DNA of 51,612 nucleotides from Basidiobolus meristosporus CBS 931.73 (lineage: Eukaryota; Fungi; Basidiobolomycota). The stretch's first letter is position 1. Every line of letters starts with the position of its first letter. The notes beneath the pieces were generated by a model. It was not told where the DNA came from. It saw nothing but the letters and a program-made list of their open reading frames with translations, and did no database searches. This document shows positions 770 through 29,425 of this stretch, in pieces. Where the stretch lies: NCBI GenBank assembly GCA_002104905.1, contig MCFE01000628.1, forward strand, positions 1 through 51,612, written 5' to 3'. The translations under genes were made by a program, and so were the position numbers.

Positions 770-976
770 ATCTAAAAGTGGCAAGGAATGCCAGGGCATC
801 ATTAGAAGACATCTATCAGACATGTTCAGCTACTAAGAGTGTGTATCTTGGTCAAAATACTTTATCAAAAAGATTCTGCCAAGAGAAGAAACAGGATATC
901 TAACTATCACATTTTCTCTGTTGACCAATGAGATGAAATCAATTGGCATACAATCTATTCATGAAGATGTCATAGC
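770..976 (+). pseudogene. gag: Old copia-A gag remnant (A0), part 1
   Basis: Translation ARNARASLEDIYQTCSATKSVYL resembles A1 Gag AKNAWKALEDTYQSCSAAKKMYL. Interrupted at ATAGC (972-976) by LTR A3. Confidence 0.65.
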
Positions 977-1224
977 TGTTGTAAAAATTTATATCTCTAC
1001 CTAACTTAGTGATGTAGATCATTACCTACAAGCTCTATAGAATAGTGATCAAATTCCTTGTTGGGATTTACTCACATTATCTTCACCTAAATATTGTTGT
1101 AAAAATTTGAAATTCCACCTAAGTGTTCACATAACTTAGTCACTTAGATCATTACCCTCAAATCCTAGAGAATACTGACCAAATTCCATGTTGGGATTTA
1201 CTTGGAATATTTTCACCAAAATAC

Positions 1225-1574
1225 TGTTGTAAAAATTTGTATTTTCCACCTAAATATTCACCTAACTTAGTCACTTAGATCATCACCTTTAAATCCTAGA
1301 GAATATTGACCAAATTCCTTGTCGGGATTTACTTAGAATATTTTCACCAAAATAACAGGTACCCAGAACATGAAAATTCTCAAAGTTGTCCTAACAGCCC
1401 CAAACTTTGCACACATGTTCTTGGGACCTTCCTTAACCTATTCTACATGTTTGTAATGCCAAGACCAGGTAAAAGTATAAATACTACTTTTACATTCAAT
1501 AAATCATTAAGTGAAAACCACATAATCTACTTGTTCTCCAAGTCACTTCCAATATCTCCAAGACTCCTACAACA
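1225..1574 (+). repeat. A1 5' LTR
   Basis: TGTTGTAA...TACAACA inverted termini. TATA-like TATAAATA 1476-1483 and AATAAA 1498-1503. Confidence 0.95.
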
Positions 1575-1586
1575 GGTTATGAGCCC
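1575..1586 (+). promoter_or_regulatory. Primer-binding site complementary to the anticodon arm of initiator tRNA-Met (half-tRNA priming, Ty5/copia type)
   Basis: GGTTATGAGCCC directly abuts the LTR and is the reverse complement of GGGCUCAUAACC. Same motif at 6138, 11237 and 13134. Confidence 0.85.
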
Positions 1587-1605
1587 CGAGCTGTCACTCT
1601 CTGCA

Positions 1606-4600
1606 ATGTCTACTACTGCTATTACTGGAATTTTTCCCTCTGCTGAAAAGTTGGATGGCTCTAACTACCAAGTGGGGAAGGTGAAGATGAAGATGCTGCT
1701 GCAAGAAAGAGGCCTTTGGGATATTGTCATGGGAGAAGAATGCCCTCCTAAAAACATGGGAGAGGAAGCCTTAAAGTACCAGAACAAAGAACAAAGTGCC
1801 TTTAACTGCATTTGCCTTAATGTCATGGACAAATTGTTAATTCAATGCTCAAGAGCAAAAACGGCAAAGAATGCCTGGAAGGCATTAGAAGACACCTACC
1901 AGTCATGTTCAGCTGCCAAGAAAATGTATCTGAGAAGAAAATTCTTTACTACAAAGATGCTGCCAGGAGAAGAGATGAGAAATATAATTAACAGAATTAC
2001 CCTGCTGGTAGATGAGATGGAATCTGTGGGCGTACCAACTACTGATGAGGATGTGATAGTTACCATCCTGAATAGCCTGACAGACAAGTTTCAGGGCCTT
2101 GTTTCAGCCCTAGAGTCCAGAACTGAAGTTTTGACCTTAAATTACGTATATGGAAGGCTCCTGGATGAAGAATTAAGAAAATCAAGCGCCAATAAGAAGG
2201 AAGAAGAAAATGCTTTAATAAGCAATGATAACCAACAAAGGAGGTACCCAAGACCCTACTAAGGCAACAGCAACCTATTTTGCAACTATTGCAAAAGGAA
2301 AGGACACACATCAGACCGGTGTCTCAAAAAGAAAGATAATCAGCAAAAGAAGCCTGAATATGGAAATGCTGCAACAACTGAAGATAGACTATTCATATCT
2401 GCACTAAATATGACCACAAACAAGGATTCTCAGACGTGGTATATTGACTCTGGAGCTTCTCAACACTTTACACACCAAAAAGAACTTTTTACCCAATATC
2501 AAGAAATTCCAATTAAGAAGGTTTTCATGGGTGACAATAGAACACTTGATGCAGTGGGAGAAGGAACTATTCAAGTAAACCTTAGAAGCAGTGAAGGAAG
2601 CCATACACTGACCTTTAAAGAAGTACTCTATGTACCAGAAATAGCCAAGAACCTACTCTCTGTAAGCAAGGCCACAGCAGAAGGACTCAGTTTCAGTTTT
2701 GACAATTCTGGATGCAGGATCACTGATCAAAATGGTGCTCATATTGCTTCGGGCATCAGAGATCAGAATCTATACAAGTTGACTTATATTCCATCATATC
2801 TGGAAGCCAATATAAGTAACTTAAATGAAGAAACACCAATGCTTTGGCACAGGAGATTTGGGCACATCAATTTTGATTATTTGCGCAAAATGATCAAAGA
2901 TCAGCTAATTTCTGGAGTGAAAATTGATCCCCCAGCTAATTTGGAGCACTGTGAAGCCTGCATATATGGGAAACAAGCTAGACAACTGTTCAAGAGCTCT
3001 GGGTTAATCAAAACTAAGAAAAAATTAGATCTAATTCACTCAGATCTGTGTGGACCTATGCAAAATTTATCCTTAGGCGGGATGAAGTATCTAATCACTT
3101 TTATTGATGATTATACAAGATACACATGGGTCTACTTCATGGAGAGAAAGGAAGAAGCTCTGTCTAAGTTCAGGGAGTTTAAAGCCATGGTGGAGAGAGA
3201 AACTGGTGAAAAAATTCAAGAAAATACGCTCCAACAATGGTGGAGAATATACCTCAAAACTCTTCATCCACATCTGCAAAATTCATGGGATAAAGCAAGA
3301 GACTACTGTACCATACTCCCCACAGCAAAATGGAGTAGCAGAACAAGCTAACAGATCAATCATTGATATGGCAAGATCTATGATCCATGATCAAAAATTA
3401 TCCTATGTTTTTTGGGCGGAATCAGTTGCCACTGCTGTATATCTTAAAAATAGGAGTTATAACAGAATACTTTGTGATTCTACTCCATTTGAAGCATGGT
3501 ATGGATACAGACCAAGTGCAGAACATCTAAGAATATTTGGGTGTACAGCATATGCCAAAAAACTGGCCGGAAATCAGTCAAAATTTGAGCCAAAAAGTGT
3601 AAAATGCATATTTTTGGGCTACTACAATGAGAGTAAGGCATACAGACTCTACAATACCAAAGCAAAGAAGCTTATCAAGTCCAGGGATGTGTTGTTTGAT
3701 GAAAATTCAAAATTTTCACAAAAAATGACATCAGATGATGACAAAAATTTGATCTCAAGTCCACCAATTGCCAGGATTGAATCAGAGCAAAACAATGAAA
3801 ATTTTTTCACTCCAGAGGACTCTACAACTGTGGTTCAGCCAGAATCAGTGCCCAGGAATATCCCAGAAGTGATCATTCCAGTATCAAATGCCCGGAGATC
3901 AAATTGGACAAGAAATAGCCCAAATTACTATATTAATGAGGGTACAAACTTAGCCTATGCCTATTCAGTCCATATTGATGAACCCCAGACTGTAAAAGAG
4001 GCCCTAAATAGCCCTCAGACGGAGTTTTGGAGATCTGCAATGACTGAGGAATATCAGGCCCTGATGGAAAATCAAACTTGGGACTTAGTCAAATTACCAA
4101 TCAACCAAAAATCAATTGGATGCAGATGAGTCTTCAAGACAAAATACAAGGCTGATGGTACAATTGAAAGATACAAAGCAGGACTTGTAGCCAAAGGATA
4201 CTCTCAAACAAAAGGACTTGACTATACTGAGACCTTTGCACCGGTAGTCAAGTTTAATTCCATCAGATTAATATTGGCTATTGCAGCCAAGTATAAGTTT
4301 TTTATTCATCAAATGGATGTAAAAACTGCATTTTTGAATGGAGAACTTGATGAGGACGTATATATGGACCAGCCTGATGGGTTTATTGACCAAGATAACC
4401 CCCATTTGGTCTGCAAGCTTAAAAAGTCACTATATGGTCTCAAACAATCACCAAGAGCCTGGAATTGCAAGATAGATTCTTATTTGGAATCTTTGAGTTT
4501 CAAAAGGAGTAATGCTGACTATAGTATATACTATAAGCCAGATAGAGCAAATCCCGTTCTATTAGCTCTATAGGTGGATGATCTTATTATAGCCGCCAAT

Positions 4601-5551
4601 AACCTAGAAACATTGGAAGAGACTAAATCCAGCCTATCTAAGGAGTTCAAGATGTCTGATTTAGGAGAACTTAGTTACTACTTAGGGATTAAGTTCTCCA
4701 TAGACAGAAGTACCCAGACTATCACCCTAAGTCAATCCAAGTATATTCAAGATATACTAAAGAAGTACAAAATGGAAGACTGTAAACCGGCAGCTACCCC
4801 AATGGAGACAAACCTTAACTTGGTCAAAACTCAACCAAATCAAGAGAGCTTGGTGCCATCTGAAAGCCCTGACTTTCCTTATCAATCTGTAATTGGCAGT
4901 CTGATGTATATCATGCTTGGAACACGTCCAGATATCTCATATTCAGTGGGAGTTGTCAGCCAACATAATCAGAATTATGGATCTGATCATATTGCAGCAG
5001 TTAAGCGGAGTTTTAGATACCTAAAAGGAACTGCTGATATCTGCTTAAGATACACTTATAATGATTCAGAACAGAATCTTGTGGGATACTCTGATGCTGA
5101 TTGGGGACAAAATTTGGAAGACAGAAGATCCACCACAGGATACACCTTTCTTTACTGTAAAGGAGCAATTTCATGGAATTCAAGAAAGGAACCAACCGTA
5201 GCACTTTCTACTACAGAGGCAGAGTATATGGCAGCCTGTGAAGCTACAAAAGAAGCAATGTGGTTAAGAAAGCTGTTTACAGATTTAGGCCTATGTCAAA
5301 AAACACCTATTACTTTATTTCAAGATAATCAAGGATGTATACATTTAGGTAGAAATCCAACTTTTCATGCTAGAACCAAGCACATAGATATTAGACATCA
5401 TTTCATACGTGAAGCTATAGAGAATAACTTAGTTAGCTTAGTTTACTGTCCTACAGATGAAATGATTGCAGACATATTTACCAAACCATTAGCTAGAGAC
5501 AAGTTTGAATATTTTAGGTCAAAATTAGGACTAGTCAGTATGAACATTTAG
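1606..5551 (+). pseudogene. pol: A1 gag-pol polyprotein (Gag, CCHC knuckle, PR, IN, RT, RNase H), disrupted
   Basis: CNYCKRKGHTSDRC; WYIDSGASQH; HRRFGH..CEAC; HSDLCGP; PQQNGVAE; [12 protein letters not shown]; YSDADW; ADIFTK. Lesions: TAA 2260, +1 frameshift about 3215, TGA 4127, TAG 4571. Confidence 0.95.
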
Positions 5552-5553
5552 CT

Positions 5554-5562
5554 GAGTGGGAG
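5554..5562 (+). promoter_or_regulatory. Polypurine tract of A1
   Basis: GAGTGGGAG immediately 5' of the 3' LTR. Same in A2 and, as GAGTGGAAG, in A4. Confidence 0.8.
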
Positions 5563-5912
5563 TGTTGTAAAAATTTGTATTTTCCACCTAAATATTCACC
5601 TAACTTAGTCACTTAGATCATCACCTTTAAATCCTAGAGAATACTGACCAAATTCCTTGTTGGGATTTACTTGGAATAATTTCACCAAAATAACAGGTAC
5701 CCAGAACATGAAAATTCTCAAAGTTGTCCAAACAGCCCCAAACTTTGCACACATGTTCTTGGGACCTTCCTTAACCTATTCTACGTGTTTGTAATGCCAA
5801 GACCAGGTAAAAGTATAAATACTACTTTTACATTCAATAAATCATTAAGTGAAAACCACATAATCTACTTGTTCTCCAAATCACTTCCAATATCTCCAAG
5901 ACTCTTACAACA
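5563..5912 (+). repeat. A1 3' LTR
   Basis: Direct repeat of 1225-1574 (about 97.7%). Confidence 0.95.
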
Positions 5913-6168
5913 AATACTAGGTACCCAGTACATGAAAAATTTTCAAATTTGTTCAAACAGCCCCAAACTCTGCACACATGGTCTTGGGACTTTTCTTAAC
6001 CTATTCTACATGTTTGTAATGCCAAGACCATGTAAAAGTATAAATACTACTTTTGTATTCAATAAATCATTAAGTGAAAACCACATAATCTACTTGCTCT
6101 CCCAATCACTCCCAATATCTCCAAGATTCTTACAACAGGTTATGGGCCCCAAGCTGTCACTCTCAGCA

Positions 6169-9100
6169 ATGTCTACTACAGCTATTACTGGAGTTTTCCC
6201 TCTGCTGAAAAGTTGGATGGATCTAACTATTAAGTGTGGAAGGTGAAGATGAAGATGCTGCAACAAGAAAGAGGCCTTTGGGATATTGTCATGGGAGAAG
6301 AATGCCCTCCTAAAAACGTGGGAGAGGAAGCCTTAAAGTATCAGAAGAAAGAACAAAGTGCCTTTAACTGCACTTGCCTTAATGTTAAAGACAAATTGCT
6401 AATTCAATGCTCAAGAGCAAAAATGGCAAAGAATGCCTGGAAGGCATTGGAAGACACCTACCAGTCATGTTCAGCTGCCAAGAAAATGTATCTGAGACAA
6501 AAATTCTTTACTACAAAGATGCTGCCAGGAGAAGAAATGAAAAATATAATTAACAGAATTACCTTGCTGGTAGATGAAATGGAATTGGTGGGTGTACCAA
6601 CTACTGATGAGGATGTGATAGTTACCATCCTGAATAGCCTGACAGACAAGTTTCAGGGCCTTGTATCAGCCCTAGAGTCCAGAACTGAAGATTTGACCTT
6701 AAATTATATATATGGAAGGCTCCTGGATGAAGAATTAAGCAAATCAAGCACCAATACAAAGGAAGAAGAAAATGCTTTAATAAGCAATGAAAACCAACAA
6801 AGGAGGTACCCAAGACCCTACAAAGGCAACAGCAACCTGTTTTGAAGCTACTGCAAAAGGTAAGGACACACATCAGACCTGTGCTTCAAAAAGTAAGATA
6901 GTCAGCAGAAAAAGCCTGGATATGGAAATGCTGCAACAACTGAAGATAGATTATTCATATTGACACTAAATATGACCACAAACAAGGATTTTCAGACATG
7001 GTACATTGACTCTGGAGCATCTCAACACTTTACACACCAAAAAGACTTTTTACCCAATAGCAAGAAATTCCGATTAAGAAGGTTTTCATTGGTTGACAAT
7101 AGAACACTTGATGCAGTGGGAGAAGCAACTATCCAAGTAAACCTAAGAAGCAGTGAAGGAAGCCATACACTGACTTCCAAAGAAGTACTTTATGTACCAG
7201 AAATAGCCAAGAACCTATTATCTTTAAGCAAGGCCACTGCAGAAGGACTCAGTTTCAGCTTTGACAATTCTGGATGCAAGATCAGTGATCAAATTGGTGC
7301 CCATCTTGCTTTGGGTATAAGAGATCAGAATCTATACAAGTTGACTTATATTCCATCATATTTGGAAGCCAATATAGGTAACTTAAATGAAGAAACACCA
7401 ATGCCTTGGCACAGGAGATTTGGGCACATCAATTTTGATTATTTGCGCAAAATGATCAAAGATCAGCTAATATCTGGAGTAAAAATTAATCCCCAAGCTA
7501 ATTTGAGGCACTGTGAAGCCTGCATATATGGGAAATTAGCCAGACAACTGTTCAAGAGCTCAGGATTGATCAAAACCAAGAAAAAATAGATCTAATTCAC
7601 TCAGATCTGTGTGGACCTTAGCAAAATTTATCCTTAGGCAGGATGAAGTATTTAATCACTTTTATTGATGATTATACTAGATACACATGGGTCTACTTCA
7701 TGAAGAGAAAGGAAGTAGTTCTGTCTAAGCTCAGGGAGTTTAAAGCCATGGTGGAGAGAGAAACTGGTGAAAAAATCAAGAAAATATGCTCTGACAATGG
7801 TGGAGAATATGCCTCAAAACTCTTCATCCACATCTGCAAAATTCATGGGATAAAGCAAGAGACTACTGTACCATACTCCCCACAGCAAAATGGAGTAGCA
7901 GAACGTGCTAGCAGATCAATAATTGATATGGCAAGATCTATGATCTATGATCAAAAATTATACTATGATTTTGGGCAGAATCAGTTGCCACTGCTGTATA
8001 TCTTAAAAATGGGAGTTATAACAGAATACTTTGAGATTCTACTCCATTTGAAGCTTGGTATGTATATAGACCAAATGCAGAATATCTAAGAATATTTGGG
8101 TGTACAGCATATGCCAAGACACTGCCTGGAAATCAGTCAAATTTGAGCCAAAAATGTAAAATGCATATTTTTGGGCTACTGCAATGAGAGTAAAGCATAC
8201 AGACTCTACAATACCAAAGCAAAGAAGCTAATCAAGTCCAGGGATGTGTTGTTTTATGAAAATTCAAAATTTTCACAAAAAATGACATCAGATGATGACA
8301 AAATCTGATCTCAAATCCACCAATTGTCTGGATTAAATCAGAGCAAAACAATGAGAATCTTTTCACTCCAGAGGACTCTATAACCGTGGTTCAGCCAGAA
8401 TCAGTGCCCAGAAATATCCCAGAAGTGATCATTCCAGTATCAAATGCCCAGAGATCCAATTGGACAAGAAATAGCCCAAATTACTATATCAATGAGGGTG
8501 CAAACCTAGCCTATGCCTATTCAGTCCATATTGATGAACCCCAGACTGTAAAAGAGGCCCTAAATAGCCCTCAGACAAAGTTTTGGAGATCTGCAATGAC
8601 TGAAGAATATCAGGCCCTGATGGAAAATCAAACTTGGGACTTAGTCAAATTACCAATCAACCAAAAATCAATTGGATGCAGATGGGTCTTCAAGACAAAA
8701 TACAAGGCTGATGGTACAATTAAAAGATACAAAGCAAGACTTGTAGCCAAAGGATGCTCACAAATAAAAGGACTTGACTATACTGAGACCTTTGCACCAG
8801 TAGCTAAGTTTAATTCCATCAGATTAATATTGACTATTGCAGCCAAATATAAGTTTTTTAATCATGAAATGGATGTAAAAGCTGCATTTTTGAATGAAGA
8901 GCCTGATGAGGACATGTATATGGACCAGCCTGATGGGTTTGCCAACCAAGATAACCCTCATTTGGTCTGCAAGCTTAAAAAGTCTCTATATGGTCTCAAA
9001 CAATCACCAAGAGCCTGGAATTGCAAGATAGATTCTTATTTGGAATCTTTGAGTTTCAAAAGCAGTAATGCTGACTATAGTATATACTATAAGTCAGATA

Positions 9101-10107
9101 GAGCAAATCCAGCTCTATTAGCTCTATAGGTGGATGATATTATTATAGCCACCTATAACCTAGAAACATTGGAAGAGACTAAATCCAGCCTATCTAAGGA
9201 GTTCAAGATGTCCAATCTAGGAGAACTTAGTTACCACTTGGGGATTAAGTTCTCCATAGACAGAAGTACCCAGACTATCACCCTAAGCCAATCCAAGTAT
9301 ATTCAAGATATACTAAAGAAGTACCAAATGGAAGACTGTAAACCAGCTGCTACCCCAATGGAAACAAACCTTAACTTGGTCAAAACTCAACCAAATAAAG
9401 AGAGCTTGGTGCCATCTAAAAGCCCTGACTTTCCTTATCAATCTATGGTTTGCAGCCTGATGTATATCATGCTTGGAACATGTCCAGATATCTCATATTC
9501 AGTGGGAGTTGTCAGCCAACATAATCAGAACTACGGATCTGATCATATTGCAGCAGTTAAGCGGATTTTTAGATACCTAAAAGGAACTGCTGATATCTGC
9601 CTAACATACACTTATAAGGATTCAGAACAGGATCTTGTGGGATACTCTGATGCTGATTGGGGACAAAATTTGGACGACAGAAGATCCACCACAGGATACA
9701 CCTTTCTTTACTGTAAAGGAGCAATTTCATGGAGCTCAGGAAAGCAACCAACCGTAGCACTTTCCACCACAGAGGCAGAGTATATGGCAGCCTGTGAAGC
9801 TACAAAAAAAGCAATGTGGTTAAGAAAGCTTTTTACAGATTTAGGCCTATGTCAAAAAACACCCATCACTTTATTTCAAGATAATCAAGGATGTATACAA
9901 TTAGGTAGAAATCCAACTTTTCATGCTAGAACCAAGCACATAAATATTAGACATCATTTCATACATGAAGCTATAGAGAATAACTTAGTTAGCTTAGTTT
10001 ACTGTCCTACAGATGAAATGATTGCAGACATATTTACCAAACCATTAGCTAGAAACAAGTTTGAATATCTTAGGTCAAAATTAGGACTAGTCAGTATGAA
10101 CGTTTAG
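6169..10107 (+). pseudogene. pol: A2 gag-pol, multiple frameshifts and stops
   Basis: ORF fragments 6234-6845, 6960-7589, 7643-8089, 8386-9129, 9130-10107 are colinear with A1. Confidence 0.92.
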
Positions 10108-10697
10108 CTGAGTGGGAGTGTTATAAAAATTTGTAATTCCACCTAAATATTCACCTAGCTTAGTCACTTAGATCATTACCCTCAGATCCTAGAGAATACT
10201 GACCAAATTCCTTGTTGGGATTTACTTGGAATAATTTCACCAAAATACCAGGTACCCAGAATATGAAAAATTCTCAAAGTTGTTCAAACAGCCCCAAACT
10301 TTGCACACATGGTCTTAGGACCTTCCTTAACCTATTCTACATGCTTGTAATGCCAAGACCATGTAAAAGTATAAATACTACTTTTACATTCAATAAATCA
10401 TTAAGTGAAAACCACATAATCTACTTGTTCTCCCAATCACTTCCAATATCTCCAAAACTCTTACAACAAGTATCAGGTACCAAGAACATGAAAATTCTCA
10501 AAGGTGCTCAAACGGCCCCAAGCTTTGCACACATGTTCTTGGGGCCTTCCTAAATCTATTCTATTGGCTTATTATGCCAAGATTATACAGAAGTATAAAT
10601 ACTCCTTTTACAATCAATAATTAACTAAGTGAAAACCATATAATCTACCTGTTCTCCTAATCACTTCCAATATCTCCAAGACCATCACCTCAGTAGC

Positions 10698-10890
10698 TAC
10701 CCACCTATATAGCCTGAAAGGCATATTTTAGGGCCTCTTATAAGCCCTAGAGTGCAGAACTGAAGTCATGATCTTAAAGTATCCATATAGAAGTCCTAGA
10801 TATGGAATTTAGAAAATCCAGTGCAAATATGCAGGAAGAAGACAATGCTCTAATAAACAATGACTGCCACCAAAGAAGGCACTCAAGACC
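10698..10890 (+). pseudogene. gag: Old copia-A gag remnant (A0), part 2
   Basis: GCCCTAGAGTGCAGAACTGAAG...EEDNALINND matches A1 Gag C-terminus (ALESRTE...EEENALISND). Confidence 0.65.
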
Positions 10891-10896
10891 CTCTAA

Positions 10897-12161: not shown

Positions 12162-12715
12162 TGTGGGTTATTACCATCTCTACTTGGTAGTTGAGAGAGC
12201 TTGTAGGTCAAGTCAGTACTGCTTGGCTCAGAATAGCTTCTAATAGAAGGTAGTAAGGTAATAAAGACATGTGTTCATTATGTCCAAAAAACCCTGCCAT
12301 TACAATCTTGACTCAATCAGATTTATATATCTCACTGGAAGGGACTTAGGTTATAGACAGTATGCTTTAAATAGGTGTGTGAACACCTTTATGTTATGGT
12401 AAGTGTCTCAACTGTTGTTAAGATTTGTAATTCCACCTAAATAGTCACCTACCTTAGTCAGCTCATTACCTTCAAATCCTGGGGAGTACTGACCAAATTC
12501 CTTGTTGGGATTTACTTGAAGTATTTTCACCATAATACCAGGTACCCAGAACATGAAAATTCTCAAAGTTGTCCAAACAGCCCCAAGCTTTGCACACATG
12601 TTCTCAGGACCTTGCTTAGCCTATTCTATGTCTTTATTATGCCAAGTACATGTAAAAGTATAAGTACTTCTTCTACATTCAATAGATCACTGAGTGAAAG
12701 CCATGTAGTCTACTT

Positions 12716-13085
12716 TGTGGGATATTACTGACTGTACTTGGTAAGTGGGATAGCTTGTAGGTCAAGTCAGTATCACTTGGTTCAGAATAGCTTCCAATAG
12801 AAGGTAGCAAGGTAATAAAGACTTGTGTTTATTCCATCTAAATCCCCTTCACTTGGTTCAATTGGGTACATATATATATCACTTGGGGGTGCGTAGATAA
12901 TAGACAATGTGTTATAAAATAGGGGTGTGAACACCTTCCTGTTATGGTAAGTGCTCTAACTAGATAAGGGCAGGGATAGGAGGGAGGGCATGTAGTGGAA
13001 CCATAGGGAGGATACTGGGGGACTTTGGGTAGGACTCTGGGGAGAACTCTTGGGCAAAGAGTGGGTAAGGCATTTAGTACTCACA
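12716..13085 (-). repeat. Solo LTR of Ty3 family B inside the A4 5' LTR
   Basis: TGTGGG...ACTCACA is the reverse complement of the B1 LTR. Perfect TSD TACTT (12711-12715 / 13086-13090). Confidence 0.9.
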
Positions 13086-13164
13086 TACTTGTCCTCCCAG
13101 ATCACTTCCAATATCTCCAAGACTCTTATAACAGGTTATGAGCCCCAAGCTGTGACTATCTGCA

Positions 13165-14249
13165 ATGTCTACTACTACTATTACTGGAATTTTTCCCTCT
13201 GCTGTAAAGTTGGATGGATCTAACTACCAAGTGTGGAAGGTTGAGATAAAGATGCTGCAACAAGAAAGAGGCCTTTGAGATATTGTCATGGGAGAGGAAT
13301 ACCCTCCTAAAAACATGGGAGAGGAAGACTTAAGGCACCAGAAGGAAGAACAAAGTGGCTTTAACTGCATTTGCCTTAATGTTGAAGACAAATTGCAAAT
13401 TCAATGTTCAAAAGCAAAAACGGCAAAGAATGCCTGGAAGGCATTAGAAGACACCTACCAGTCATGTTCAGCTGCTAAGAAACGTTATCTTAGACAAAAA
13501 GTCTTTGCTATAAAGATGCTGCAAGGAGATGAAATGAAAATTCTAATTAACAGAATTACCCTGCTAATGGATGAGATTGAATCTGTGGGCATTCCAGCCA
13601 TGGATGAGGATATGAGAATAACCATCCTGAGTTGCCTGACAGACAAGTTTCAGGGCCTTATATCAGCCCTAGAGTCCAGAACTGAACATTTGACCTTAAA
13701 TTGCATATAAGGAAGGCCCCTGGATGAGGAATTAAGAAAATCAGGCACCAATAAGAAGGAAGAAGAAAGTGCTCTAATAGGCAGTAATAACCAACAAAGA
13801 AGGTATCCATATCCTTACAAAGGCAACAGCAACCTGTTTTGCAACTACTGCAAAAGAAAAGGACTCACATCAGACTGGTGTCTCAAAAAGAGTGATAATC
13901 AGCAAAGATGACTAAATATGGAAATATTGCAACAACTGAAGACAGTCTATTCATATCTGCACTATATTTGCCCACAAACAGAGATTCTTAGATGTGGTAC
14001 ATTGAATTTGGAGCATCTCAACACTCTACAAACCAAAAAGTACTTTTACCCAATACCAAGAAGTTCCAATCAAGAAGATTTCATAGGTAACAATAGAACA
14101 CTTGATGCAGTGGGAGACAGAATTATCCAAGTAAACCTTAGAAGCAGTGAAGGGAGCCATACACTCACCTTTAAAGAAGTACTCTATGTACCAGAAATAG
14201 CCAAGAACCTGCTCTCTGTAAGGAAGGCTACAGCAGAAGGACTCAGCTT
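13165..14249 (+). pseudogene. gag: A4 gag-protease remnant
   Basis: ORFs 13288-13710 and 13918-14265 match A1 Gag and PR (AKNAWKALEDTYQSC; EVLYVPEIAKNLLS). Confidence 0.85.
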
Positions 14250-17200
14250 TGTGGGTTATAACTGACTGTACTTGGTGAGTGGGAGAGCTTGTAGGTCAAG
14301 TCAGTTGCAAATGTTGTTGGGGCTTGTCCTTGTTATGGTCAATGTGATGGTGGGGGACCTTTTCAAGAGGGTGTTCACATGGTTGGCAGTCACCCATTGT
14401 TGATAACAAGTTTTTGCTTCTTCCACGATGTATTGTAGCTCTTCCATAGAAGCTGTGGTGCAATTGAGGCACTTTTGCACTCTCCTCATGGTCTCTACCA
14501 AGTCCACAGTGGTTTACTTGGCTTCTTGGAGTTGGACTGTGTACTGGTTCCTGAGTTGTCCTATGGTAAACCACCGTAATAGTTGTAACACAGCAACTTG
14601 GTAGATCACATGGGTTAACTGGCTGGTGTATTTAATCCATTTGTATATCTTCCCTAGGATGGTTCCTTCTTGGAAATGCGGTTCAAGATGTTTGCAAATT
14701 TCTTGGAGAAGTCCCTTGATTGGGAGTTCTACTTTGAGTGCTCTTGCGGCTTGTACCAAGTCTGTGTATACCTCAACAACCGTGGTACCTATTAATAACA
14801 AGTATGCAACAAAACAGGGGGGCGCTCAAGGTCTTGTGAGGGTGCAACAGTTGATTCCTTGCATCTTCTGTCTGACTGTGTCCAGTGAGATACCGGAATC
14901 AGTGCAGCATCCTTCTCATTAATGATCAAGGAACCTCCTCTCAGGTGGTACATGGTCTTCTTGTGTAGTGTCTCCTTACTTTGTATTGGCATGGGTAACT
15001 TGTCTTGTCCCTCTCTGATTGTGCCTTGAATCAACATTACTGCTCTGGCAAACAACCATTCATAGGTGGCTCTTGTGGCACGTAATATTTGTACCATATC
15101 TCTGAACACTTGCAGGTTGGTCTTGTTTTTGATATCATCTTGGTTATTGCTGGTGGGAGGGGTATCACCAGTTTTGGGTGAACTGTTTCCTTTGGTGCTT
15201 TCCATATGCATTCTTTTGTTCTCCCTTTTGGGCAAACTTCCATGCACATATCATTTGTACCTATAGAGACAAAATTTTCCTCTAATAAACTTTGTATGTA
15301 TCCTATGTCTTCATCTATCCTTGTCCTAATAGTTGTTTAATAACACTTTGATTTCAGATGGGCTGGCGCTACATTGCTGATTGTCTTATTGTTCAGGGTG
15401 ATGGTGAACTTTGGCCAGTAGTCTAAACTATAACCATGCAAGGGCCAATCCATTGGGGTGTAAATAGTGGGCAAAACTTGAGGCCTGCAACAGTTTGGTT
15501 GTACCACACTTAATTGCGTGGTTTCCACACTTGTCCCATTAGTTTCTCATTTTTGGGTGGAGGGGGAAGGTGCTTGTCAACATTTTTGAATACTTTGATG
15601 TATAGGTGGGCAATACAGTGTACCAACCTTTCTACATAGATATTATGTGTTGTTAAGGGGACACCATCAATTGTCAATCCAGCTTATTCACACCACTTGG
15701 GCCTTTGTCCATACAGAACTTTGTACAGGGAGAGACCTGTTGTCTTATTTGGTATTGTACACATTGCTAGGAGTGTCAGTGGGAGTAGCTTGGCCCATGA
15801 CTGCGGAAGTTCCCAGCAAAGCTTCTCTAGTATGCAGCAACATGTCTGGTTCATCCTCTTGGTTAATCCATCGGTCTAGGGATGATACACGGCCGTAAAG
15901 ACCTGTTTCATGCCCATCATTTTGCACAAATGGGCCAAGGTACTGTTCAGGAAGGAACCACTATTGTTGGACAGGAGTATCAGAGGATATCTGTGCCGGC
16001 AGATGAGGTGTTCTAGAATGAATTGGGCGGTTGTCTTCTGATCTTTATTTCAAGTGGCTTGGGCTTCTATCCACTTTGAGAAATAACTGGTAGTAATTGA
16101 TGTATTGTTCTCCTTTCTTTGTTTTCATGAAGGGGCCAACAGAGCCAATCCCTGAAGAGTGGAAGTGTAGGTCAAGCGGTATTGGTGTGGTTGTCCCTAT
16201 TATCTGACTCCAGTTAAATATTTCACATGTGGAGCATCTTTGTAATATAATCATGACTTTGATCATCATTTTTTCCAGTAAAATGTCTTTCTTAACATCT
16301 TATATGCTGTTAGGGGGTTAGTGTGTACTAATGACCTATGTCTTTCTTGTATGATTTCTTTGCAGGCATTTACCAGGGGTACTTTAGCGCTGGGCTGTCC
16401 TTGGAGGAACCATAATTGGTCTTCTTGTACTTTGTACTGACACCATTTACTTGAAAAGTCTTGCTTCTGCTTGTTTGTAACAATGTGTTGGGGGTAATTC
16501 CCTTGTCTTTTAAAGCAGATTACATCCTTGTAGTCATTGCTGACATGTACTTGGCAAACAGGATAGCAGCTGAGGAGGTCTGCATCCTGGTGTGTCTTGC
16601 CAGTGCAATGAATTATTTTGAAGTTGTATTCTTGTAGTTGGAGGGCCCAATGTGCTAGTTGACTTGTAAAGTCTTTAGTTTTCATCAGCCAGACAAGTGT
16701 ACTGTGGTCCATTACTATTGTGAATTGGTGACCATGTTTGTATGTATGGAATTGTTTAATTGAATAAACAACAGCCAGACATTTTGTCTTAGTAACAGGG
16801 AAGTAATGTTTGTGTTTGCTTTGCAAACAGCTCATGTAACCAATTGGGTGGAATCTGCCAGGTTGGTGGTATTGTCCCAGCAAAGCACCTATACTGGTGA
16901 GACTTCCTTCACAATTAATAAAAAATCCGGCATCCCAATTGCAAAAATGTAACACAGGCTGTGATGCCAAGGAATGTTTCAGCTGATTGAATGCTCTCTT
17001 TTGAGGCTGCTCCAACCACACAAAACACTAGCCTTTTGTGTCAATTTGTACATGGGGGCTGCTATTGTTGCAAAGTTCTTGACAAAGTGGCAATAGTAGA
17101 CAGCTAATCCTGGGAATCCCAAAACTACATTGATATCCTTTGGTGTAGGTGTATCATGCATGGCTTTTAGGAGTAAAGTAGATGGGTATATCCCATCTGG

Positions 17201-20081
17201 CAAGATCTTGTGGCCCAGGAACAACAATAGTGTATACAGGAAATGGCACTTTTTGGGATGAAGTTTGAATTGGCTCTTGAGGAGGGCTCTCAGGATATGT
17301 TGCACATTGTGTATATGTTCTTCTACATTGGGGAAATATATGGTGATGTCATCCAGATACACAAGAGCACATCCCATTGTAAATTTTCTAGCACCTTATT
17401 GATCATTCTTTGGAAAGTAGCAGGAGCATTGTAGAAGCCAAAGGGTAGTTAATTCCATTTGTATAATCCAAACAATGTTATATAAGCAGCTTTGGGTTGA
17501 TCTTCCAGGGCTACTTCTACTTGCCAATACCTGGAAATTAAGTCAAGAGAGCTAAAATATTTATCTCCAATTAATCTGTCCAAGAGCTTGTTTATCTGCA
17601 GTAGTGAATACACATCCTTTCAGGTGATGGCATTCAATTTTTGGTAGTTGATGCAAAAATGTTGCTTTCTATCTTTCTTTGGGACTATCACTACAGGGGA
17701 GGCCCAAGGAGACTGGCTCTCTGTATTGATGTTTTCATTTAATAGTGTTTTGATTGTCTCTTTGATATAGTTTGTGTCAATTTTTGAGTTCCTATAGGCT
17801 TTTTGCTTGATGGGATATTTGTCAGTAAGGTGGATTTGGTGATATACCCCAGGTATATGACCAATTACTTGGTTCTTAGAGAATACTCAGGCAAGCAGGT
17901 GTATTCCTTCTAAGAGCTTTTCTTGTAATATAGGTGGCAGACTGGGGTCCACATCTAGTTCAGGGAGTTCTTCTTCTGGTTCCTTATTTTAGGTGGTCCT
18001 TGGTTGTTTCTGACAACTTCCTCTAGGTTTAACAATGGCACTCCTCTTGGCAATGTCACCATGTGTTGCCTGTTGTTAACCACTAAGCACTACAGACTTT
18101 GGGTTTCAAATTTTGGTGGTATCCATACTTTAGGGATCAAGATTCCTTCCAGTTGTATGGATGCTTTTGTTGTGGCTATCATTCTTCTGCTTCTCAAATA
18201 AGCTATTGGTGTCTTTAATGGGATCACTGTCTCACTGGAGGGTGGTATTTTTATCACCTTTTATGTGATGATTGGAGACTGCAACAGTTTCACCTCTTTG
18301 ATTGTCACACTGTTGCAACATACCTTGCTCTCATTGGTGATATGAATCAGTAGGATACTCTTGGTATCCCACCTGAGTTCAGATGCACTGTAGAGTATGA
18401 CCATCTTATGTTGGATAAACCAACTCTTGCCAATGAGTAAGTCATTGGCTGAGACAAGTAGAACCTCAACATGTTGGTGTTTAATCAAGTTGCCTAGCCA
18501 GATGGGGAAATTAGGCACCACTCCTACTGTTGTGTCCAGCTGGTCATTTGCTAGCTGTACCCAAATGGTGTTGTTGGGGACTAAATCTAACTTGAGATGT
18601 TTTGCTAATGACTCTGACATGATCAATGTAGAGGATCCTGCGTAAATAAGGGCAGGAATCTCCATATTCTCTATACGTATCTTTACATATGTACCTTTAT
18701 TTGGTTTTTGTAGGACCATCTGGTTGACATGAAGGGTTGTTATCTCCTTCATTCCCTCTATCAGTTCCTTGACTAGAGCTTGGCCAAGTCCCAGTAAATT
18801 GGTTGTTGGGAAGGTTGCCTTGGTTTGCTCTAGTGCCTTCATTACGGGGAATAAGCTGTGGGAAGATGTACAAGTGTTCTTTGTTTGCTTCAACACCTCT
18901 TCCCAAGGCTCATTCTATACCTCTTCACCAAGTTCTGCGTACTTTCCTTTTGACAGAACCTCTACTCCAGGTTCCTTTGCCTCCTCTCTAGAAGCATCAT
19001 GTTAACGCTTCTTCTTCCGCACTTCAACTGTTCTGACCAGAGGGCTTAGATTGACTGAGTCCTGTTGGCCTCCTGGCAAGGGACTCTGTCTTTTGATGCC
19101 TTCTCTTTTGTGTCCGGAGCAGGTTCTTGTCCATACCGTTTTTTACATTTGTAGGCTCAGTGGCCTAATTCTTCACATACATAACACAGGTACTGTTGTT
19201 GCGGTTGTTCCATCCGTTGGGTCAGGGCTTGCACCAGGGCCTCTAGATCTACAACAGCTTCCCAGAGTTTATCACCTTCTTTGAGGACTTCTTGGACATT
19301 GTTGATTGAGAGTTCTTGGACCTTTTGCCATAATTCCTCTAACTCATGGTCTTGTGGGGAGGCAATTTTTTCTTTCTTATAGGGGATCCCTGTCCTTCAA
19401 CTCAACTGTTGTAAAGATTTGTAATCCCACCTAAATAGTCACCTAACTTAGTCAGCTCATTACCTTCAAATCCTGGGGAGTACTGACCAAATTCCTTGTT
19501 GAGATTTACTTGAAGTATTTTCACCATAATACCAGGTACCCAGAAAATGAAAATTCTCAAAGTTGTCCAAACAGCCCCAAGCTTTGCACACATGTTCTCA
19601 GGACCTTGCTTAGCCTATTCTATGTCTTTGTTATGCCAAGTACATGTAAAAGTATAAGTACTTCTTCTACATTTAATAGATCACTGAGTGAAAGCCATGT
19701 AGTCTACTTTGTGGGATATTACTGACTGTACTTGGTGAGTAGGAGAGCTTGTAGGTCAAGTAGTACCACTTGGTTCAAAATAGCTTCTGAAAGAAGGTAG
19801 CAAGGTAATAAAGACTTGTGTTTATTCAGTCCAAATCTCTTTGTTCCCTCACTTGGTTCAATTGGATATATATATCACTTGGGGGGACTTAGATAATAGA
19901 CAATGTGTTTGAAAATAGAGGTGTGAACACCTTCCTGTTATGGTAAGTGCTCTAACTAGATAAGGGCAGGAATTGGAGGGAGGATGCGTGGGGGAATCAT
20001 AGGGAGTATACTGCGGGACTTTGGGTAGGACTCTGGGGGGAACTTTTGGGCAAAGAGTGGGTACTACATTTAGTACTCACA
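14250..20081 (-). mobile_element. Ty3 element B2, degenerate. 5' LTR 19710-20081, 3' LTR truncated to 14250-14304, PBS and gag 5' part replaced by foreign DNA
   Basis: TSD AGCTT (14245-14249) / AGCTC (20082-20086) in A4 pol. ORF3, IN, RH, RT, PR and gag C-terminal remnants colinear with B1 (ORFs 14514-14801, 16266-17021, 16979-17377, 18261-18896). Confidence 0.88.
19401..19736 (+). repeat. Recent duplicate of 12407-12742 (A4 LTR segment with both of its junctions)
   Basis: About 7 differences in about 303 nt. Includes the flanking CTCAAC, a private 4-nt deletion and the TACTT/B-LTR junction. Confidence 0.9.
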
Positions 20082-22455
20082 AGCTCCAGCTTTGATAATT
20101 CTGGATGCAGGATCACTGAGCAAAATGGTGCCCATATTGATTTGGGTATCAGTGATCAGAATCTATAAAAGTTGGTTTATATTCCAGCATACTTGGGAGC
20201 CAATATAAGTACCTTATATGAAGAAGCACCAATGCTTTGGCACAGGAGATTTGGGCATATCAATTTTGATCATTTGCGCAGAATGACCTAGGATCAGCTA
20301 ATTTCCAGAGTAAAAATTGCTCCCCCAGCTAAGTAGAAGCACAGTTAAGCTTGCATATATGGGAAACAAGCCAGACAACTGTTAAAGAGCTCTGGGTGGA
20401 TCAAAACTAAGAAAAAATTAGATCTAATTCACTCAGAACTGTTTACCTATACAAAATTTATCCTTAGGCAGGAGGAAGTATCAAATCACGTTTATTAATG
20501 ATTATTCAAGATACACATGAGTCTACTTCATGGAGAGAAAGGAAGAAGCTTTTTCTAGGCTCAGGGAGCTTAAAGCCATGGTGGAGTGAGACACTGGTGA
20601 AAAAATTCAAGAAAATATGCTCTGGTAATGGTGGAGAATATAACTCAAAACTCTTAATCCACTTCTGCAAGATTCATGGGATAAAGCAAGAGACTACTGT
20701 ACCATACTCCCCACAGCAAAATGGAGTAGCAGAATGTGCAAACAAATCAATCATTGACATGGCAAGATCTATGATCTATGATCAAAAATTATCTTATGAT
20801 TTTTGGGTGGAATCAGTTGCCACAGCTGTATATCTTAAAAATAGGAGTTATAACAGAATACTTTGTGATTCTACTCCATTTGAAGCATGGAATGGATACA
20901 GACCAAGTGCAGAACATCTAACAATAATTGGGTGCACAGCATATGCTAAGAAACTGTCTGGAAATAAGTCAAAATTTGAGCCAAAAAGTGTTAAATGCAT
21001 ATTTTTGGGCTACTGAAATGGGAGTAAAGCATACAGACTCTACAATACCAAAGCAAAGAAGCTAATCAAGACCAGGATGTGTTGTGCGGTGAAAATTCAT
21101 TACTTTCACAAAGAATGACATCAGATGATGACAACAATCCGATCTCAAGTCCACCAATTGTCAGAATTGAATCAGAGCAAAACAAAGAAATTTTTTCACT
21201 TCAGGGGACTTTCCAACTGTGGTTTATTGTGAATCAGCGCCCAGGAATATCTCAGAAGTGATCATTCCAGTATGAAATGCCTGGAGATCCAACTGGACAA
21301 GAAATAGCCTAAATTACTACATCAATGCAGGTACAAACTTAGCCTATGCCTATTCAGTCCATACTGATGAGCCCCAGATTGTAAAAGAGGCCCTAAATAG
21401 TCCTCAGACAGAGTTTTGGAGATCTTCAATGACTGAGGAATATCAGGCTCTGATGCAAAACCAAACTTGGGACTTAGTCAACTTACCAATTAACCAATGA
21501 TCAATTGGATGCAGATGGGTCTTTGAGACAACATATAAGGCTGATGGTACACTTGAAAGATACAAAGTAAGACTTGTGGCCAAAGAATACTCTCAAACAA
21601 AAGAACTTGACTATATTGAGACCTTTGCACCAGTAGCCAAGTTTAGTTGCGTCAGATTGACATTGGCCATTACAGCCAAATATAAGTTTTTTTAATTATC
21701 ACATGGATGTAAAAACTGCATTTTTGAATAGAGAACTTGATGAGGACTTGTATATGGACAAGCCTGATGGGTTTGTTGACCAGGATAACCCCCATTAGGT
21801 CTGCAAGCTTAAAAAATCTCTATATTGCCTCATGCATTGACCAAGTGCCTGGAATTGCAAGATAGATTCTTATTTTGAATCTTTGAGTTTCAAGAGGAGC
21901 AATGCTAAAATGAGCATATACTTTAAGCCAGACTGAGCAAATCCAGCTCTTCTAACACTATAGGTGGATGATCTTATTATAGCCACCAATAACCTAGAAA
22001 CATTGGAAGAGACTAAATCCAGCCTATCTAAAAAGCTCAGGATGTCTAATCTAGGAGAACTCAGTTACCACTTAGGGATTTAGCTCTTAAAGTAACCAAC
22101 TGTAGCACTTTCTACCACAGAGGCAAAGTATATGGCAGCCAGTGAAGCTATAAAAGAAGCTATGTGGCTAAGAAAGCTTTTTACTGATTCAGGCCTATGT
22201 CAAAAAATGCCTACCATTTTATCTCAAGAAAATCAAGGATATATACAAATAGGCAAAAATCCAACTTTTCATGCTAGAACCAAGCACATAGATATCAGAT
22301 ATCATTTCATATGTGAAGCTATAGAGAATAGCTTGGTTAGCTTAGTTTACTGTCCTTTAGATGAAATGATTGCTGACATATTTACCAAACCATTATCTAG
22401 AGACAAGTTTGAATATCATTGGTCAAAATTAGGACTAGTCAGTTTGAGTATTTAG
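20082..22455 (+). pseudogene. pol: A4 IN-RT-RNase H remnant with an about 490-nt internal deletion near 22085
   Basis: ORFs 20498-21016 and 22132-22455 match A1. Sequence jumps from CTTAGGGATT to AACCAACTGTAGCAC. Confidence 0.85.
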
Positions 22456-22647
22456 CTGAGTGGAAGTGTTTTAAAAATTTGTAATTCCACCTAAATAATC
22501 ACCTAGCTTAGTCACTTATATCATTACCTTCAAATCCTAGGCAATACTGACCAAATTCCTTGTTGGGATTTACTCAGAATATATACCCAGAACATGAAAA
22601 TTAATAAGTTGTTCAAACAGCCCCAAAATTTGCACAAATGTTCTTGG

Positions 22648-23037
22648 TATGAGTACTCAATGTAGTACCCACTCTTTGCCCAAGAGTTCTCCCAAGAGTT
22701 CCCTCCAGAGTCCTACCCAAAGTCCTCCAGTACCCTCCCTATGATTCCCCCACACGTCCTCCCCTCCTATCCCTGCCCTTATCTAGTAAGAACACTTACC
22801 ATAACAGGAAGGTGTTCACACCCCTATTTTATAACACATTGTCTATTGTCTAAGCCCCCCCCCCAAGTGATATATATATCTACCCAATTGAACCAGGAAG
22901 AACAACGAGATTTGGACAAAATAAACAGAAGTCTTTATTACCTTGCTACCTTCTTTCGGAAGCTATTCTGAACCAAGTGGTACTGACTTGACCTACAAGC
23001 TCTCCCACTCACCAAGTACAGTCAGTAATAACCCACA
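22648..23037 (+). repeat. B1 5' LTR (390 bp)
   Basis: TA/TGTGAG...CCCACA. Direct repeat of 29038-29425. Contains an ATATATAT TATA-like run. Confidence 0.95.
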
Positions 23038-23041
23038 TATT

Positions 23042-23055
23042 TGGTGCTGTCTCTG
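23042..23055 (+). promoter_or_regulatory. Putative primer-binding site of B1
   Basis: TGGTGCTGTCTCTG starts 4 nt after the LTR; TGG is complementary to tRNA CCA. Cognate tRNA not identified. Confidence 0.55.
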
Positions 23056-23078
23056 CGGAAATAAGCACAAGAGAGGTA

Positions 23079-27694: not shown

Positions 27695-27823
27695 TTAAAC
27701 AATTATCAGGACAAGGATAGAGGAAGACACGGGATACATTCAAAGTTTATTAGAGGAGATTTTAGTCGATATAGGTACAAATAATATGCGCGAGGGAGTT
27801 TGCCCAAAGGGGAGAACAAAAGA

Positions 27824-28993: not shown

Positions 28994-29037
28994 TCAAAGA
29001 ACTTCAAGGACGAAGCTCCCACTTAACCCCCGGGATA

Positions 29038-29425
29038 TGTGAGTACTCAATGTAGTACCCACTCTTTGCCCAAGAGTTCTCCCAAGAGTTCCCTCCAGAG
29101 TCCTACCCAAAGTCCTCCAGTACCCTCCCTATGATTCCCCCACGCGTCCTCCCCTCCTATCCCTGCCCTTATCTAGTTAGAACACTTACCATAACAGGAA
29201 GGTGTTCACACCCCTATTTTATAACACATTGTCTATTGTCTAAGCCCCCCCCAAGTGATATATATATCTTCCCAATTGAACCAGGAAGAACAACGAGATT
29301 TGGACGAAATAAACAGAAGTCTTTATTACCTTGCTACCTTCTATTGGAAGCTATTCTGAACCAAGTGGTACTGACTTGACCTACAAGCTCTCCCACTCAC
29401 CAAGTACAGTCAGTAATAACCCACA
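29038..29425 (+). repeat. B1 3' LTR (388 bp)
   Basis: TGTGAG...CCCACA. About 8 differences from the 5' LTR, including C-run length. Confidence 0.95.

What the first reader, a model, noticed from the sequence alone, without database searches (positions are those of the whole stretch)
977..10692. Copia family A inserts into its own LTR at one fixed nucleotide position (twice, nested)
Seen: A1 sits in the A2 5' LTR and A2 sits in the A3 LTR at the same homologous site, ...TTCACCAA[AATAC/AATAT]CAGGTACC..., each with a 5-bp TSD and in the same orientation. The empty allele is visible in other LTRs (about 10238-10260, 29889-29910). Established: TSDs indicate integrase products, and some LTR elements target chromatin marks or bound proteins (Ty5-Sir4, Ty3-TFIIIB). 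Inference: a protein bound in U3, or a sequence or structure next to the GGTACC palindrome, tethers the integrase. That would be a self-targeting strategy that also splits the host copy's promoter-bearing LTR.
Basis: partly seen in the sequence, partly recalled or inferred. Interest (0 to 1): 0.85.

Follow-up and report, generated by a model that had tools for sequence, protein, structure and literature searches.

The report
Copia nest reusing one LTR site
Three copies of one very abundant copia-type jumping gene in the fungus Basidiobolus sit one inside the other, and both inner copies entered the outer copy's terminal repeat at exactly the same five bases; this hints at a preferred landing site but, with only two events, does not prove one.

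Summary
A1 (1225-5912) splits the 5' LTR of A2 (1095-1224 and 5913-6137). A2 splits solo LTR A3 (977-1094 and 10469-10692). A3 lies in the gag gene of an older copy, A4. Both LTR insertions use homologous LTR positions 126-130, in the same orientation, with 5-bp duplications (AATAC/AATAC; AATAT/AGTAT).

LTR-pair divergence rises outwards (K2P 0.023 for A1, 0.076 for A2, about 0.2 for A3 against the others). This fits successive integrase insertions and rejects tandem duplication, a duplicated-LTR element, gene-conversion copying and an assembly artefact.

The site abuts the best-conserved LTR block, CAG(G/T)TACCCAG. No DNA hairpin is predicted there, and no target consensus is shared with other family insertions.

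The tethering interpretation stays untested. I could not reach other genomic copies. The one reads call was truncated and had no positive control. The family is very abundant, so self-nesting alone needs no targeting.

The scan's first readers noted a similar same-5-bp case on another piece of this genome (s1-209652, unchecked).

My odds are about 45% for a real U3 hot spot and about 38% for coincidence. The closest precedent is Tf1 with Sap1.

The parts
774..976 (+). A4: gag of an older, diverged copy (about 73% identical to A1), left of the A3 insertion; ends in ATAGC
   Evidence: blastn with A1 as query, A1 positions 633-835; flanks printed
977..1094 (+). A3 solo LTR, 5' part (LTR positions 1-130 equivalent); its last 5 bases, AATAT, are the left copy of the target duplication of A2
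1095..1224 (+). A2 5' LTR, 5' part (positions 1-130); its last 5 bases, AATAC, are the left copy of the target duplication of A1
   Evidence: (93% identical to A2 3' LTR positions 1-130)
1225..5912 (+). A1, the innermost and youngest copy. LTRs are 1225-1574 and 5563-5912 (342/350 identical, K2P 0.023). The primer-binding site GGTTATGAGCCCC starts at 1575. Domains are gag, protease, integrase, RT and RNase H. The copy is defective (stops and a frameshift, TAG at the RT YVDD Tyr, 4571-4573).
5913..6137 (+). A2 5' LTR, 3' part (positions 126-350); its first 5 bases, AATAC, are the right copy of the target duplication of A1
6138..10118 (+). A2 internal region (94% identical to the A1 internal region), defective
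10119..10468 (+). A2 3' LTR, intact, with the empty target site AATAC at 10244-10248 followed by CAGGTACCCAG at 10249-10259
10469..10692 (+). A3 solo LTR, 3' part; its first 5 bases, AGTAT, are the right copy (one mismatch) of the target duplication of A2
10693..10896 (+). A4 gag continues (starts GTAGC, the right copy of the target duplication of A3)
   Evidence: blastn, A1 positions 833-1038

Best explanation
The locus is a real stack of four same-strand copies of one Ty1/copia family, built by successive integrase-mediated insertions: A3 into the gag of A4, A2 into LTR A3, and A1 into the 5' LTR of A2. This much is shown. The two insertions into LTRs used the same 5 bp of U3, positions 126-130, directly upstream of the conserved box CAG(G/T)TACCCAG. 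I infer that this reflects a locally preferred target in the family's own U3. The integration complex would be positioned there by something sitting on or next to that box, such as a DNA-bound host factor or a fixed nucleosome edge in an active LTR. This would resemble Tf1 integrase, which inserts at fixed distances from the Sap1 motif, a protein that also binds LTRs. A broader, Ty5-like pull towards repeat-rich chromatin may add to it, because the family has a half-tRNA-type primer site and an LISSPP motif in the integrase tail. Self-nesting as such needs no targeting, because the family is extremely abundant.
For: The split is exact, with 5-bp duplications taken from each host's own sequence. 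LTR-pair divergence is 0.023 for A1 and 0.076 for A2, with A3 about 0.2 from the rest. A1/A2 internal divergence (0.060) roughly equals the sum of the two half-ages, as expected for two separate retrotranspositions from one lineage. The position and orientation are the same, about 1/700 for the pair. The site abuts the longest nearly invariant LTR block, kept even in A4 and A5 at about 70% identity. The site shares no flank pattern with the other family insertions in the window (A3 in gag; C in a family B LTR, TCAAC), so simple sequence preference does not explain it. Five of eight insertions into LTR elements in this window hit LTRs. An unchecked first-reader note reports another same-5-bp pair on another piece of the genome. 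Precedent: Tf1 insertions cluster at -9/+19 of the Sap1 motif (PMC5741268), and Sap1 binds within LTRs (PMC7175516).
Against: There are only two events. About 1,700 windows of this genome were read, so a look-elsewhere effect applies. Eight of ten intact sites in the window are empty. In the reads call, none of the 15 listed joints (of 2,621) is LTR end to LTR position 126. Listed joints show the LTR end joined to internal positions 2148, 2104 and 2568, so the family also nests elsewhere. That table was truncated and lacked a positive control. No hairpin is predicted at the site. No binding factor is known, and the family's copies here are all defective.
Confidence: 0.45

Rival explanations
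1. Coincidence. Both insertions are ordinary integrations. Repeat-rich DNA, and perhaps LTR or promoter regions in general, is simply the commonest or a mildly favoured target in a genome flooded with this family. Two hits on the same 5 bp are chance, noticed because many windows were screened.
For: 150,523 of 1,759,702 contigs of run X1 lie on this 5-kb stretch at 80% likeness or more. Other self-nesting junctions exist at internal positions. A3 and A5 are inserted in gag, and C in a family B LTR. Most copies of the site are empty. Other first-reader notes describe nests at varied positions and in antisense (unchecked).
Against: My rough expectation for a same-site pair within one window, genome-wide under uniform insertion, is only about 0.03-0.3. 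A second such case was noted elsewhere (unchecked). The orientation is also the same, and the site abuts the most conserved LTR motif.
Confidence: 0.38
2. One integration followed by copying. A single original insertion at this LTR site was later carried into another LTR by gene conversion or unequal recombination guided by LTR homology, so the shared site reflects descent and not targeting.
For: Ectopic copying does happen in this window. The segment 12407-13085 (A-type LTR positions 1-308 plus a family B LTR) recurs at 19401-20083 with about 97-98% identity over the A part. All copies have the same orientation, as recombination requires.
Against: The flanks a3/a2 are 74% identical while the adjoining LTR starts are 90-93% identical. 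b2/b3 are 79% identical while b1'/b2' are 95%. No single tandem duplication or crossover yields the observed order (three 5' LTR parts, then a 3' part, an internal region, a full LTR plus an extra 3' part, and the same again). A1's LTRs are more alike (97.7%) than A1 is to A2 (94%), as for a fresh retrotransposition. The two duplications differ and match their own hosts. A3 is too diverged (74-83%) for efficient homologous exchange.
Confidence: 0.07
3. Assembly artefact. The nest is a mis-join of reads from different copies of a high-copy repeat.
For: The family is very abundant. No listed contig piece in the reads call spans the junctions.
Against: Mis-joins occur inside shared sequence and give normal-looking LTRs. 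They do not give abrupt LTR-terminus junctions with matching 5-bp duplications and three differently diverged partial LTRs whose halves rejoin to exactly 350 bp. Run X1 holds 83% of the sampled words of 900-6200.
Confidence: 0.03

Closest known systems
[quoted passage not shown]
   Same: This is an LTR retrotransposon whose insertions fall at fixed single-nucleotide distances (-9/+19) from a bound motif (PMC5741268). The guiding protein also binds within the element's own LTRs (PMC7175516). It is the best model for 'fixed base next to a conserved box in U3'.
   Different: Tf1 is a Ty3/gypsy element that mainly hits Pol II promoters of host genes. Here the element is Ty1/copia, the only documented targets are its own LTRs, no factor is known, and there are two events against tens of thousands.
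Ty5 (Saccharomyces) targeting of silent chromatin through an integrase hexapeptide and Sir4
   Same: Both are Ty1/copia elements. The primer site GGTTATGAGCCC is of the anticodon-stem 'half-tRNA' type. An LxSSxP-like motif (LISSPP in A1, PISSPP in C) lies behind the integrase core. The hexapeptide-Sir4 tether is described in PMC7459421. Such a pull towards repeat chromatin would explain the clustering.
   Different: Ty5 targeting is regional, within silent domains, and not to one base. The exact Ty5 motif (LDSSPP) and the tRNA complementarity are recalled from memory and were not checked here. No Sir4-like partner was examined.
Ty3 integration at Pol III start sites via TFIIIB
   Same: The position is fixed to within a base or two by a DNA-bound complex, with a 5-bp duplication.
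   Different: The target here is not a tRNA gene. Ty3 is a gypsy-type element.
DIRS-1 of Dictyostelium, which inserts into its own copies
   Same: It has a documented preference for existing copies of itself (PMC5633606).
   Different: DIRS-1 uses a tyrosine recombinase and shows no apparent sequence preference. Here a DDE integrase makes 5-bp duplications at one site.
Ordinary nested LTR-retrotransposon clusters (maize-type nests)
   Same: Younger elements lie inside older ones, flanked by target duplications, and age increases outwards.
   Different: Ordinary nests are not known for reusing the same base of the same family's LTR at successive levels.

Membership tests
Ty1/copia (Pseudoviridae-type) LTR retrotransposon | Domain order gag - protease - integrase - reverse transcriptase - RNase H | tested here: met
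   Pfam matches along A1, in order: Retrotran_gag_2, Pol_BBD, gag_pre-integrs, rve, SH3_retrovirus, RVT_2
Ty1/copia (Pseudoviridae-type) LTR retrotransposon | Direct LTRs with TG...CA ends and a 5-bp target duplication | tested here: met
   350-bp LTRs run TGTTG...CAACA. Duplications are AATAC/AATAC, AATAT/AGTAT, ATAGC/GTAGC and TCAAC/TCAAC
Nested LTR-retrotransposon insertion (successive integrations) | The host LTR halves rejoin exactly after removing the insert and one duplication copy; the inner element is younger than the outer | tested here: met
   The A2 halves align 350/350 without gaps. K2P is 0.023 (A1), below 0.076 (A2), below about 0.2 (A3 against the others)
Tether-directed, base-precise LTR-element integration (Ty3/TFIIIB, Tf1/Sap1 type) | Many independent insertions pile up at a fixed distance from a bound motif | tested here: inconclusive
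   There are two events at the same base next to the conserved CAG(G/T)TACCCAG. The genome-wide test was not possible
Tether-directed, base-precise LTR-element integration (Ty3/TFIIIB, Tf1/Sap1 type) | Physical or genetic interaction between the integrase and the DNA-bound factor | not testable with these tools
   No candidate factor is known
Ty5-like heterochromatin-targeting copia | A short LxSSxP-type targeting motif in the integrase C-terminal region | tested here: met
   LISSPP (A1, about 3747-3764) and PISSPP (C); LISNPP out of frame in A2. Only the motif's presence is shown, not its function
Ty5-like heterochromatin-targeting copia | Primer-binding site complementary to the anticodon stem-loop of initiator tRNA-Met | tested here: inconclusive
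   GGTTATGAGCCCC lies directly after the 5' LTR in A1 and C. The tRNA sequence is recalled from memory and was not compared here
Ty5-like heterochromatin-targeting copia | Insertions confined to silent chromatin through a Sir4-like partner | not testable with these tools
   No chromatin data and no partner were examined

The most novel reading that the evidence does not exclude
A Ty1/copia family of an early-diverging fungus 'homes' into its own U3 with single-base precision and fixed orientation. A factor bound to the conserved CAG(G/T)TACCCAG box of active LTRs would place the integrase 1-5 bp upstream of the box. New copies would then stack inside old ones, a self-made safe haven that may have helped the family reach very high copy number.
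Probability: 0.3. Interest if true: 0.7.

Novelty: new variant of a known kind. Interest (0 to 1): 0.45.

Why it matters
Base-precise targeting is known for only a few LTR elements: Ty3 at Pol III start sites and Tf1 next to Sap1 sites. I found no report of it for a copia-type element aiming at its own LTR. If real, it would be a compact, testable model in a culturable fungus. It would show how a retrotransposon can expand enormously while sparing host genes, and how a promoter-bound factor steers an integrase. If it is coincidence, the locus is an ordinary, well-resolved nest.

Tried and rejected
1. Reads test. Only Logan contigs were available. Laying four runs on 900-5912 gave 150,523 contigs for X1, and the joint and loose-end tables were cut to 15 of 2,621 and 24 of 10,318 rows. 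The locus's own right junctions run off the stretch or are not listed, so there was no positive control. No piece spans the junctions. The test therefore decides neither the hot-spot question nor assembly support.

2. Other copies through proteins. The best hit to the A1 RT/RNase H ORF is only 72% identical, so the family is absent from that collection.

3. DNA pattern scans for LTR motifs in metagenome, viral and prokaryotic genome collections found nothing. These collections do not hold this fungus.

4. Earlier-notes search by sequence and by motif was blank.

5. Hairpin or cruciform at the site: z-scores from -0.4 to +0.9. Rejected.

6. An element with a duplicated 3' LTR part (5563-6137 paired with 10119-10692), or a tandem duplication with a period of about 4,561 bp. 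Rejected because b2/b3 are 79% identical while the neighbouring parts are 94-95%.

7. Unequal crossover or gene conversion copying the junction. Rejected on the divergence pattern.

8. Integrase-independent insertion by homology to the primer sites (as in PMC11042837, seen). By eye I saw no similarity of the target to the primer-binding site, the polypurine tract or the LTR ends, and proper 5-bp duplications are present.

9. A shared target consensus among family insertions. None was seen by eye among the flanks. A3 and C share TGTC-N5-TAC, but the LTR site does not.

10. The 30-51.6 kb part of the window holds only old, degraded repeats and gave no further test case.

Full report
**What is there.** The window's first 30 kb is almost entirely LTR retrotransposons. 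Earlier notes of this scan name the genome as Basidiobolus meristosporus, an early-diverging fungus (I did not verify this). Family A has 350-bp LTRs that run TGTTG...CAACA. LTR starts lie at 977, 1095, 1225, 5563 and 10119, and LTR ends at 1574, 5912, 6137 and 10468. I ran blastn with the intact LTR 10119-10468 as query. It gives partial matches for LTR positions 35-129 at 999-1093 and positions 1-130 at 1095-1224. Full LTRs lie at 1225-1574 and 5563-5912. Positions 125-350 match at 5912-6137, and positions 125-340 at 10468-10682.

The order of parts is therefore as follows:
- A4 gag
- A3 LTR, 5' part (977-1094)
- A2 5' LTR, 5' part (1095-1224)
- A1, complete (1225-5912)
- A2 5' LTR, 3' part (5913-6137)
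- A2 internal region
- A2 3' LTR (10119-10468)
- A3 LTR, 3' part (10469-10692)
- A4 gag, continued

A3 is a solo LTR inside the gag of an older copy. The gag match runs over A1 positions 633-835 at 774-975 and resumes at positions 833-1038 at 10694-10896, with flanks ATAGC and GTAGC. Pfam matches along A1 give the Ty1/copia order: gag, protease barrel, pre-integrase, integrase core, SH3, RVT_2. A1 is defective, with several stops and a frameshift.

**The observation.** It is right, to the base. A1 is flanked by AATAC on both sides, and A2 by AATAT and AGTAT. I removed one duplication copy and joined the two A2 5' LTR halves in memory, for comparison only. They align to the A2 3' LTR over 350 against 350 bases with no gap. 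Both insertions lie at LTR positions 126-130, on the same strand as their hosts, directly before CAGGTACC. The empty site is present in eight other LTRs of the window. It is removed by a 17-bp gap in one more, the 3' LTR of element C.

**Are these independent integrations?** I tested the alternatives by pairwise identity of all partial LTRs.
- The 5' and 3' parts pair as the nesting model predicts: a1/a1' 96.9% and b1/b1' 98.2% for A1, and a2/a2' 93.1% and b2/b2' 92.9% for A2.
- The two A3 parts are distant from everything else (about 74% and 79-84%).
- K2P distance is 0.023 for the A1 LTR pair and 0.076 for the A2 pair. The A1/A2 internal regions differ by 0.060, close to the sum of the two half-ages. 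This is what two separate retrotranspositions from one lineage would give, with the inner one younger.
- One alternative is an element whose LTR carries a duplicated 3' part (5563-6137 paired with 10119-10692). Another is a tandem duplication with a period of about 4,561 bp. Both need b2 and b3 to be as alike as their neighbours, but they are 78.7% identical against 94-95%.
- No single crossover reproduces the observed order of parts.
- Copying of the junction by gene conversion is a live process here. The segment 12407-13085 recurs at 19401-20083 and is about 97-98% identical over its A-LTR part. It does not fit the nest, though. a3/a2 are 74% identical while the adjoining LTR starts are 90-93%, and each duplication matches its own host's variant of the site.
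- An assembly mis-join would not create abrupt terminus junctions with matching duplications between three differently diverged partial LTRs.

**Is the shared site more than chance?** For this pair alone, the same position and orientation within a 350-bp LTR has odds of about 1 in 700. Two things weaken that figure.
- First, the family is very abundant. In run X1, 150,523 of 1,759,702 contigs lie on 900-5912 at 80% likeness or more. Landing in one's own family therefore needs no targeting.
- Second, about 1,700 windows of this genome were read, so some coincidences will be found.

My rough estimate of the expected number of same-site pairs within one window, genome-wide under uniform insertion, is 0.03-0.3. 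This is an inference from assumed copy numbers, not a measurement. A first-reader note reports 'two copia LTR insertions at the same 5 bp of the family's own LTR' on another piece of the genome (s1-209652). If that holds, and especially if it is the same LTR position, chance becomes unlikely. I could not check it.

**The attempted decisive test.** I laid two samples' contigs on 900-5912 so that right-hand junctions elsewhere in the genome would show as 'LTR end goes back to LTR position 126'. None of the listed joints is of that kind. Listed joints and the between-letters table do show the LTR end joined to internal positions 2148 (4 and 2 contigs), 2104 and 2568. The family therefore also nests at other places. 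The locus's own junctions are not listed either, so the test had no positive control. I draw only a weak inference: the site is not an overwhelmingly dominant target. Every other route to more copies failed.

**What could make the site special.**
- In an alignment of eight LTRs, including A4 and A5 at about 70% identity, the block CAG(G/T)TACCCAG immediately 3' of the site is among the best conserved. Ten of its eleven columns are invariant. This fits a functional protein-binding element in U3, about 120 bp upstream of the TATA-like GTATAAATAC.
- Single-strand DNA folding around the site is no better than for shuffled sequence, so a hairpin is not supported.
- The flanks share no pattern with the other family insertions in the window: A3 in gag, and C in a family B LTR with TCAAC.
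- Within the window, five of eight insertions into LTR elements hit LTRs: A1, A2, two family B insertions at A-LTR positions 196-200 and 304-308, and C in a B LTR. This hints at a general LTR or promoter preference, but solo LTRs make the baseline uncertain.
- The family also carries Ty5-like marks. The primer site GGTTATGAGCCCC lies directly after the 5' LTR, and an LISSPP/PISSPP motif lies behind the integrase core. These would suit a regional pull towards repeat chromatin (Ty5 hexapeptide and Sir4, PMC7459421), not a base-precise one.

**Comparison with known systems.** The nearest precedent for a fixed base next to a bound motif is Tf1. Its insertions cluster at -9 and +19 of the Sap1 motif (PMC5741268), and Sap1 binds preferentially within LTRs (PMC7175516). 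Ty3 is similarly precise at Pol III start sites. DIRS-1 prefers its own copies, but through a tyrosine recombinase and without sequence preference (PMC5633606). My literature searches found no report of a copia-type element reusing one base of its own LTR. These searches cover only the held library.

**Verdict.** The structure and the same-site reuse are real. The nest is the product of ordinary integrase insertions. Whether the site is a true hot spot is open. I put it at about 45%, with coincidence at about 38%, copying by recombination at about 7% and artefact at about 3%. The test that would settle it is simple once the whole assembly is at hand: map all A-in-A-LTR junctions onto LTR coordinates.

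Noticed in passing
window 4571-4573, 9127-9129, 21961-21963: All three family A copies (A1, A2, C; 88-94% identical) read L*VDD, with TAG where the Tyr of the reverse-transcriptase YVDD motif should be. The stop was inherited through retrotransposition. Either it is read through or these lineages are copied by enzymes supplied in trans. This agrees with first-reader note s1-209646.
   Followed up: partly
window 1575-1587, 13134-13146; about 3747-3764 and 21137-21154: The primer-binding site GGTTATGAGCCCC is of the initiator-tRNA anticodon-stem ('half-tRNA') type, by memory. An LISSPP/PISSPP motif lies behind the integrase core. Both are Ty5-like features, as other first-reader notes on this genome say.
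   Followed up: partly
window 12407-13085 and 19401-20083: A composite of A-type LTR positions 1-308 (with its flanking CTCAAC) plus a family B (Ty3-type) LTR occurs twice. The A part is about 97-98% identical, and identity falls off inside the B LTR. The second copy replaces the region next to one LTR of a minus-strand B element. It looks like ectopic gene conversion between B LTRs that dragged the neighbouring A LTR along.
   Followed up: partly
window 12163-29712: A second nest. Element C (family A-like, 12413-29581, duplication TCAAC) sits in a family B LTR (12163-12412 and 29587-29712). C carries three B insertions: a solo LTR (12716-13085) at A-LTR positions 304-308 (TACTT); a minus-strand B (14250-20083) in the internal region (AGCTT/AGCTC); and a plus-strand B (22648-29425) at A-LTR positions 196-200.
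   Followed up: partly
window 22575-22590: The 3' LTR of element C lacks 17 bp that cover exactly the target site and half of the GGTACC box (alignment). The cause is unknown.
   Followed up: no
window 51-30120: All seven family A-like copies in the first 30 kb (A4, A3, A2, A1, A5 at 10897-, C, and the LTR at 29772-30120) are on the + strand. The two-sided chance is about 1.6% if orientations were independent.
   Followed up: no
window 900-5912 (reads): The family is very abundant in the 2016 sample: 8.6% of all contigs of run X1 lie on this stretch. Several internal-deletion joints, such as 2275 to 2541, have contig depths many times those of single listed contigs, which suggests amplified deletion derivatives. 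A second sample from 2013 carries only more distant relatives.
   Followed up: no
window 29772-30120: A complete A-type LTR has non-matching flanks (GCTCA / TCTCC). It is not a simple solo LTR with a target duplication. It may be a recombinant between two elements or the remnant of a truncated one.
   Followed up: no
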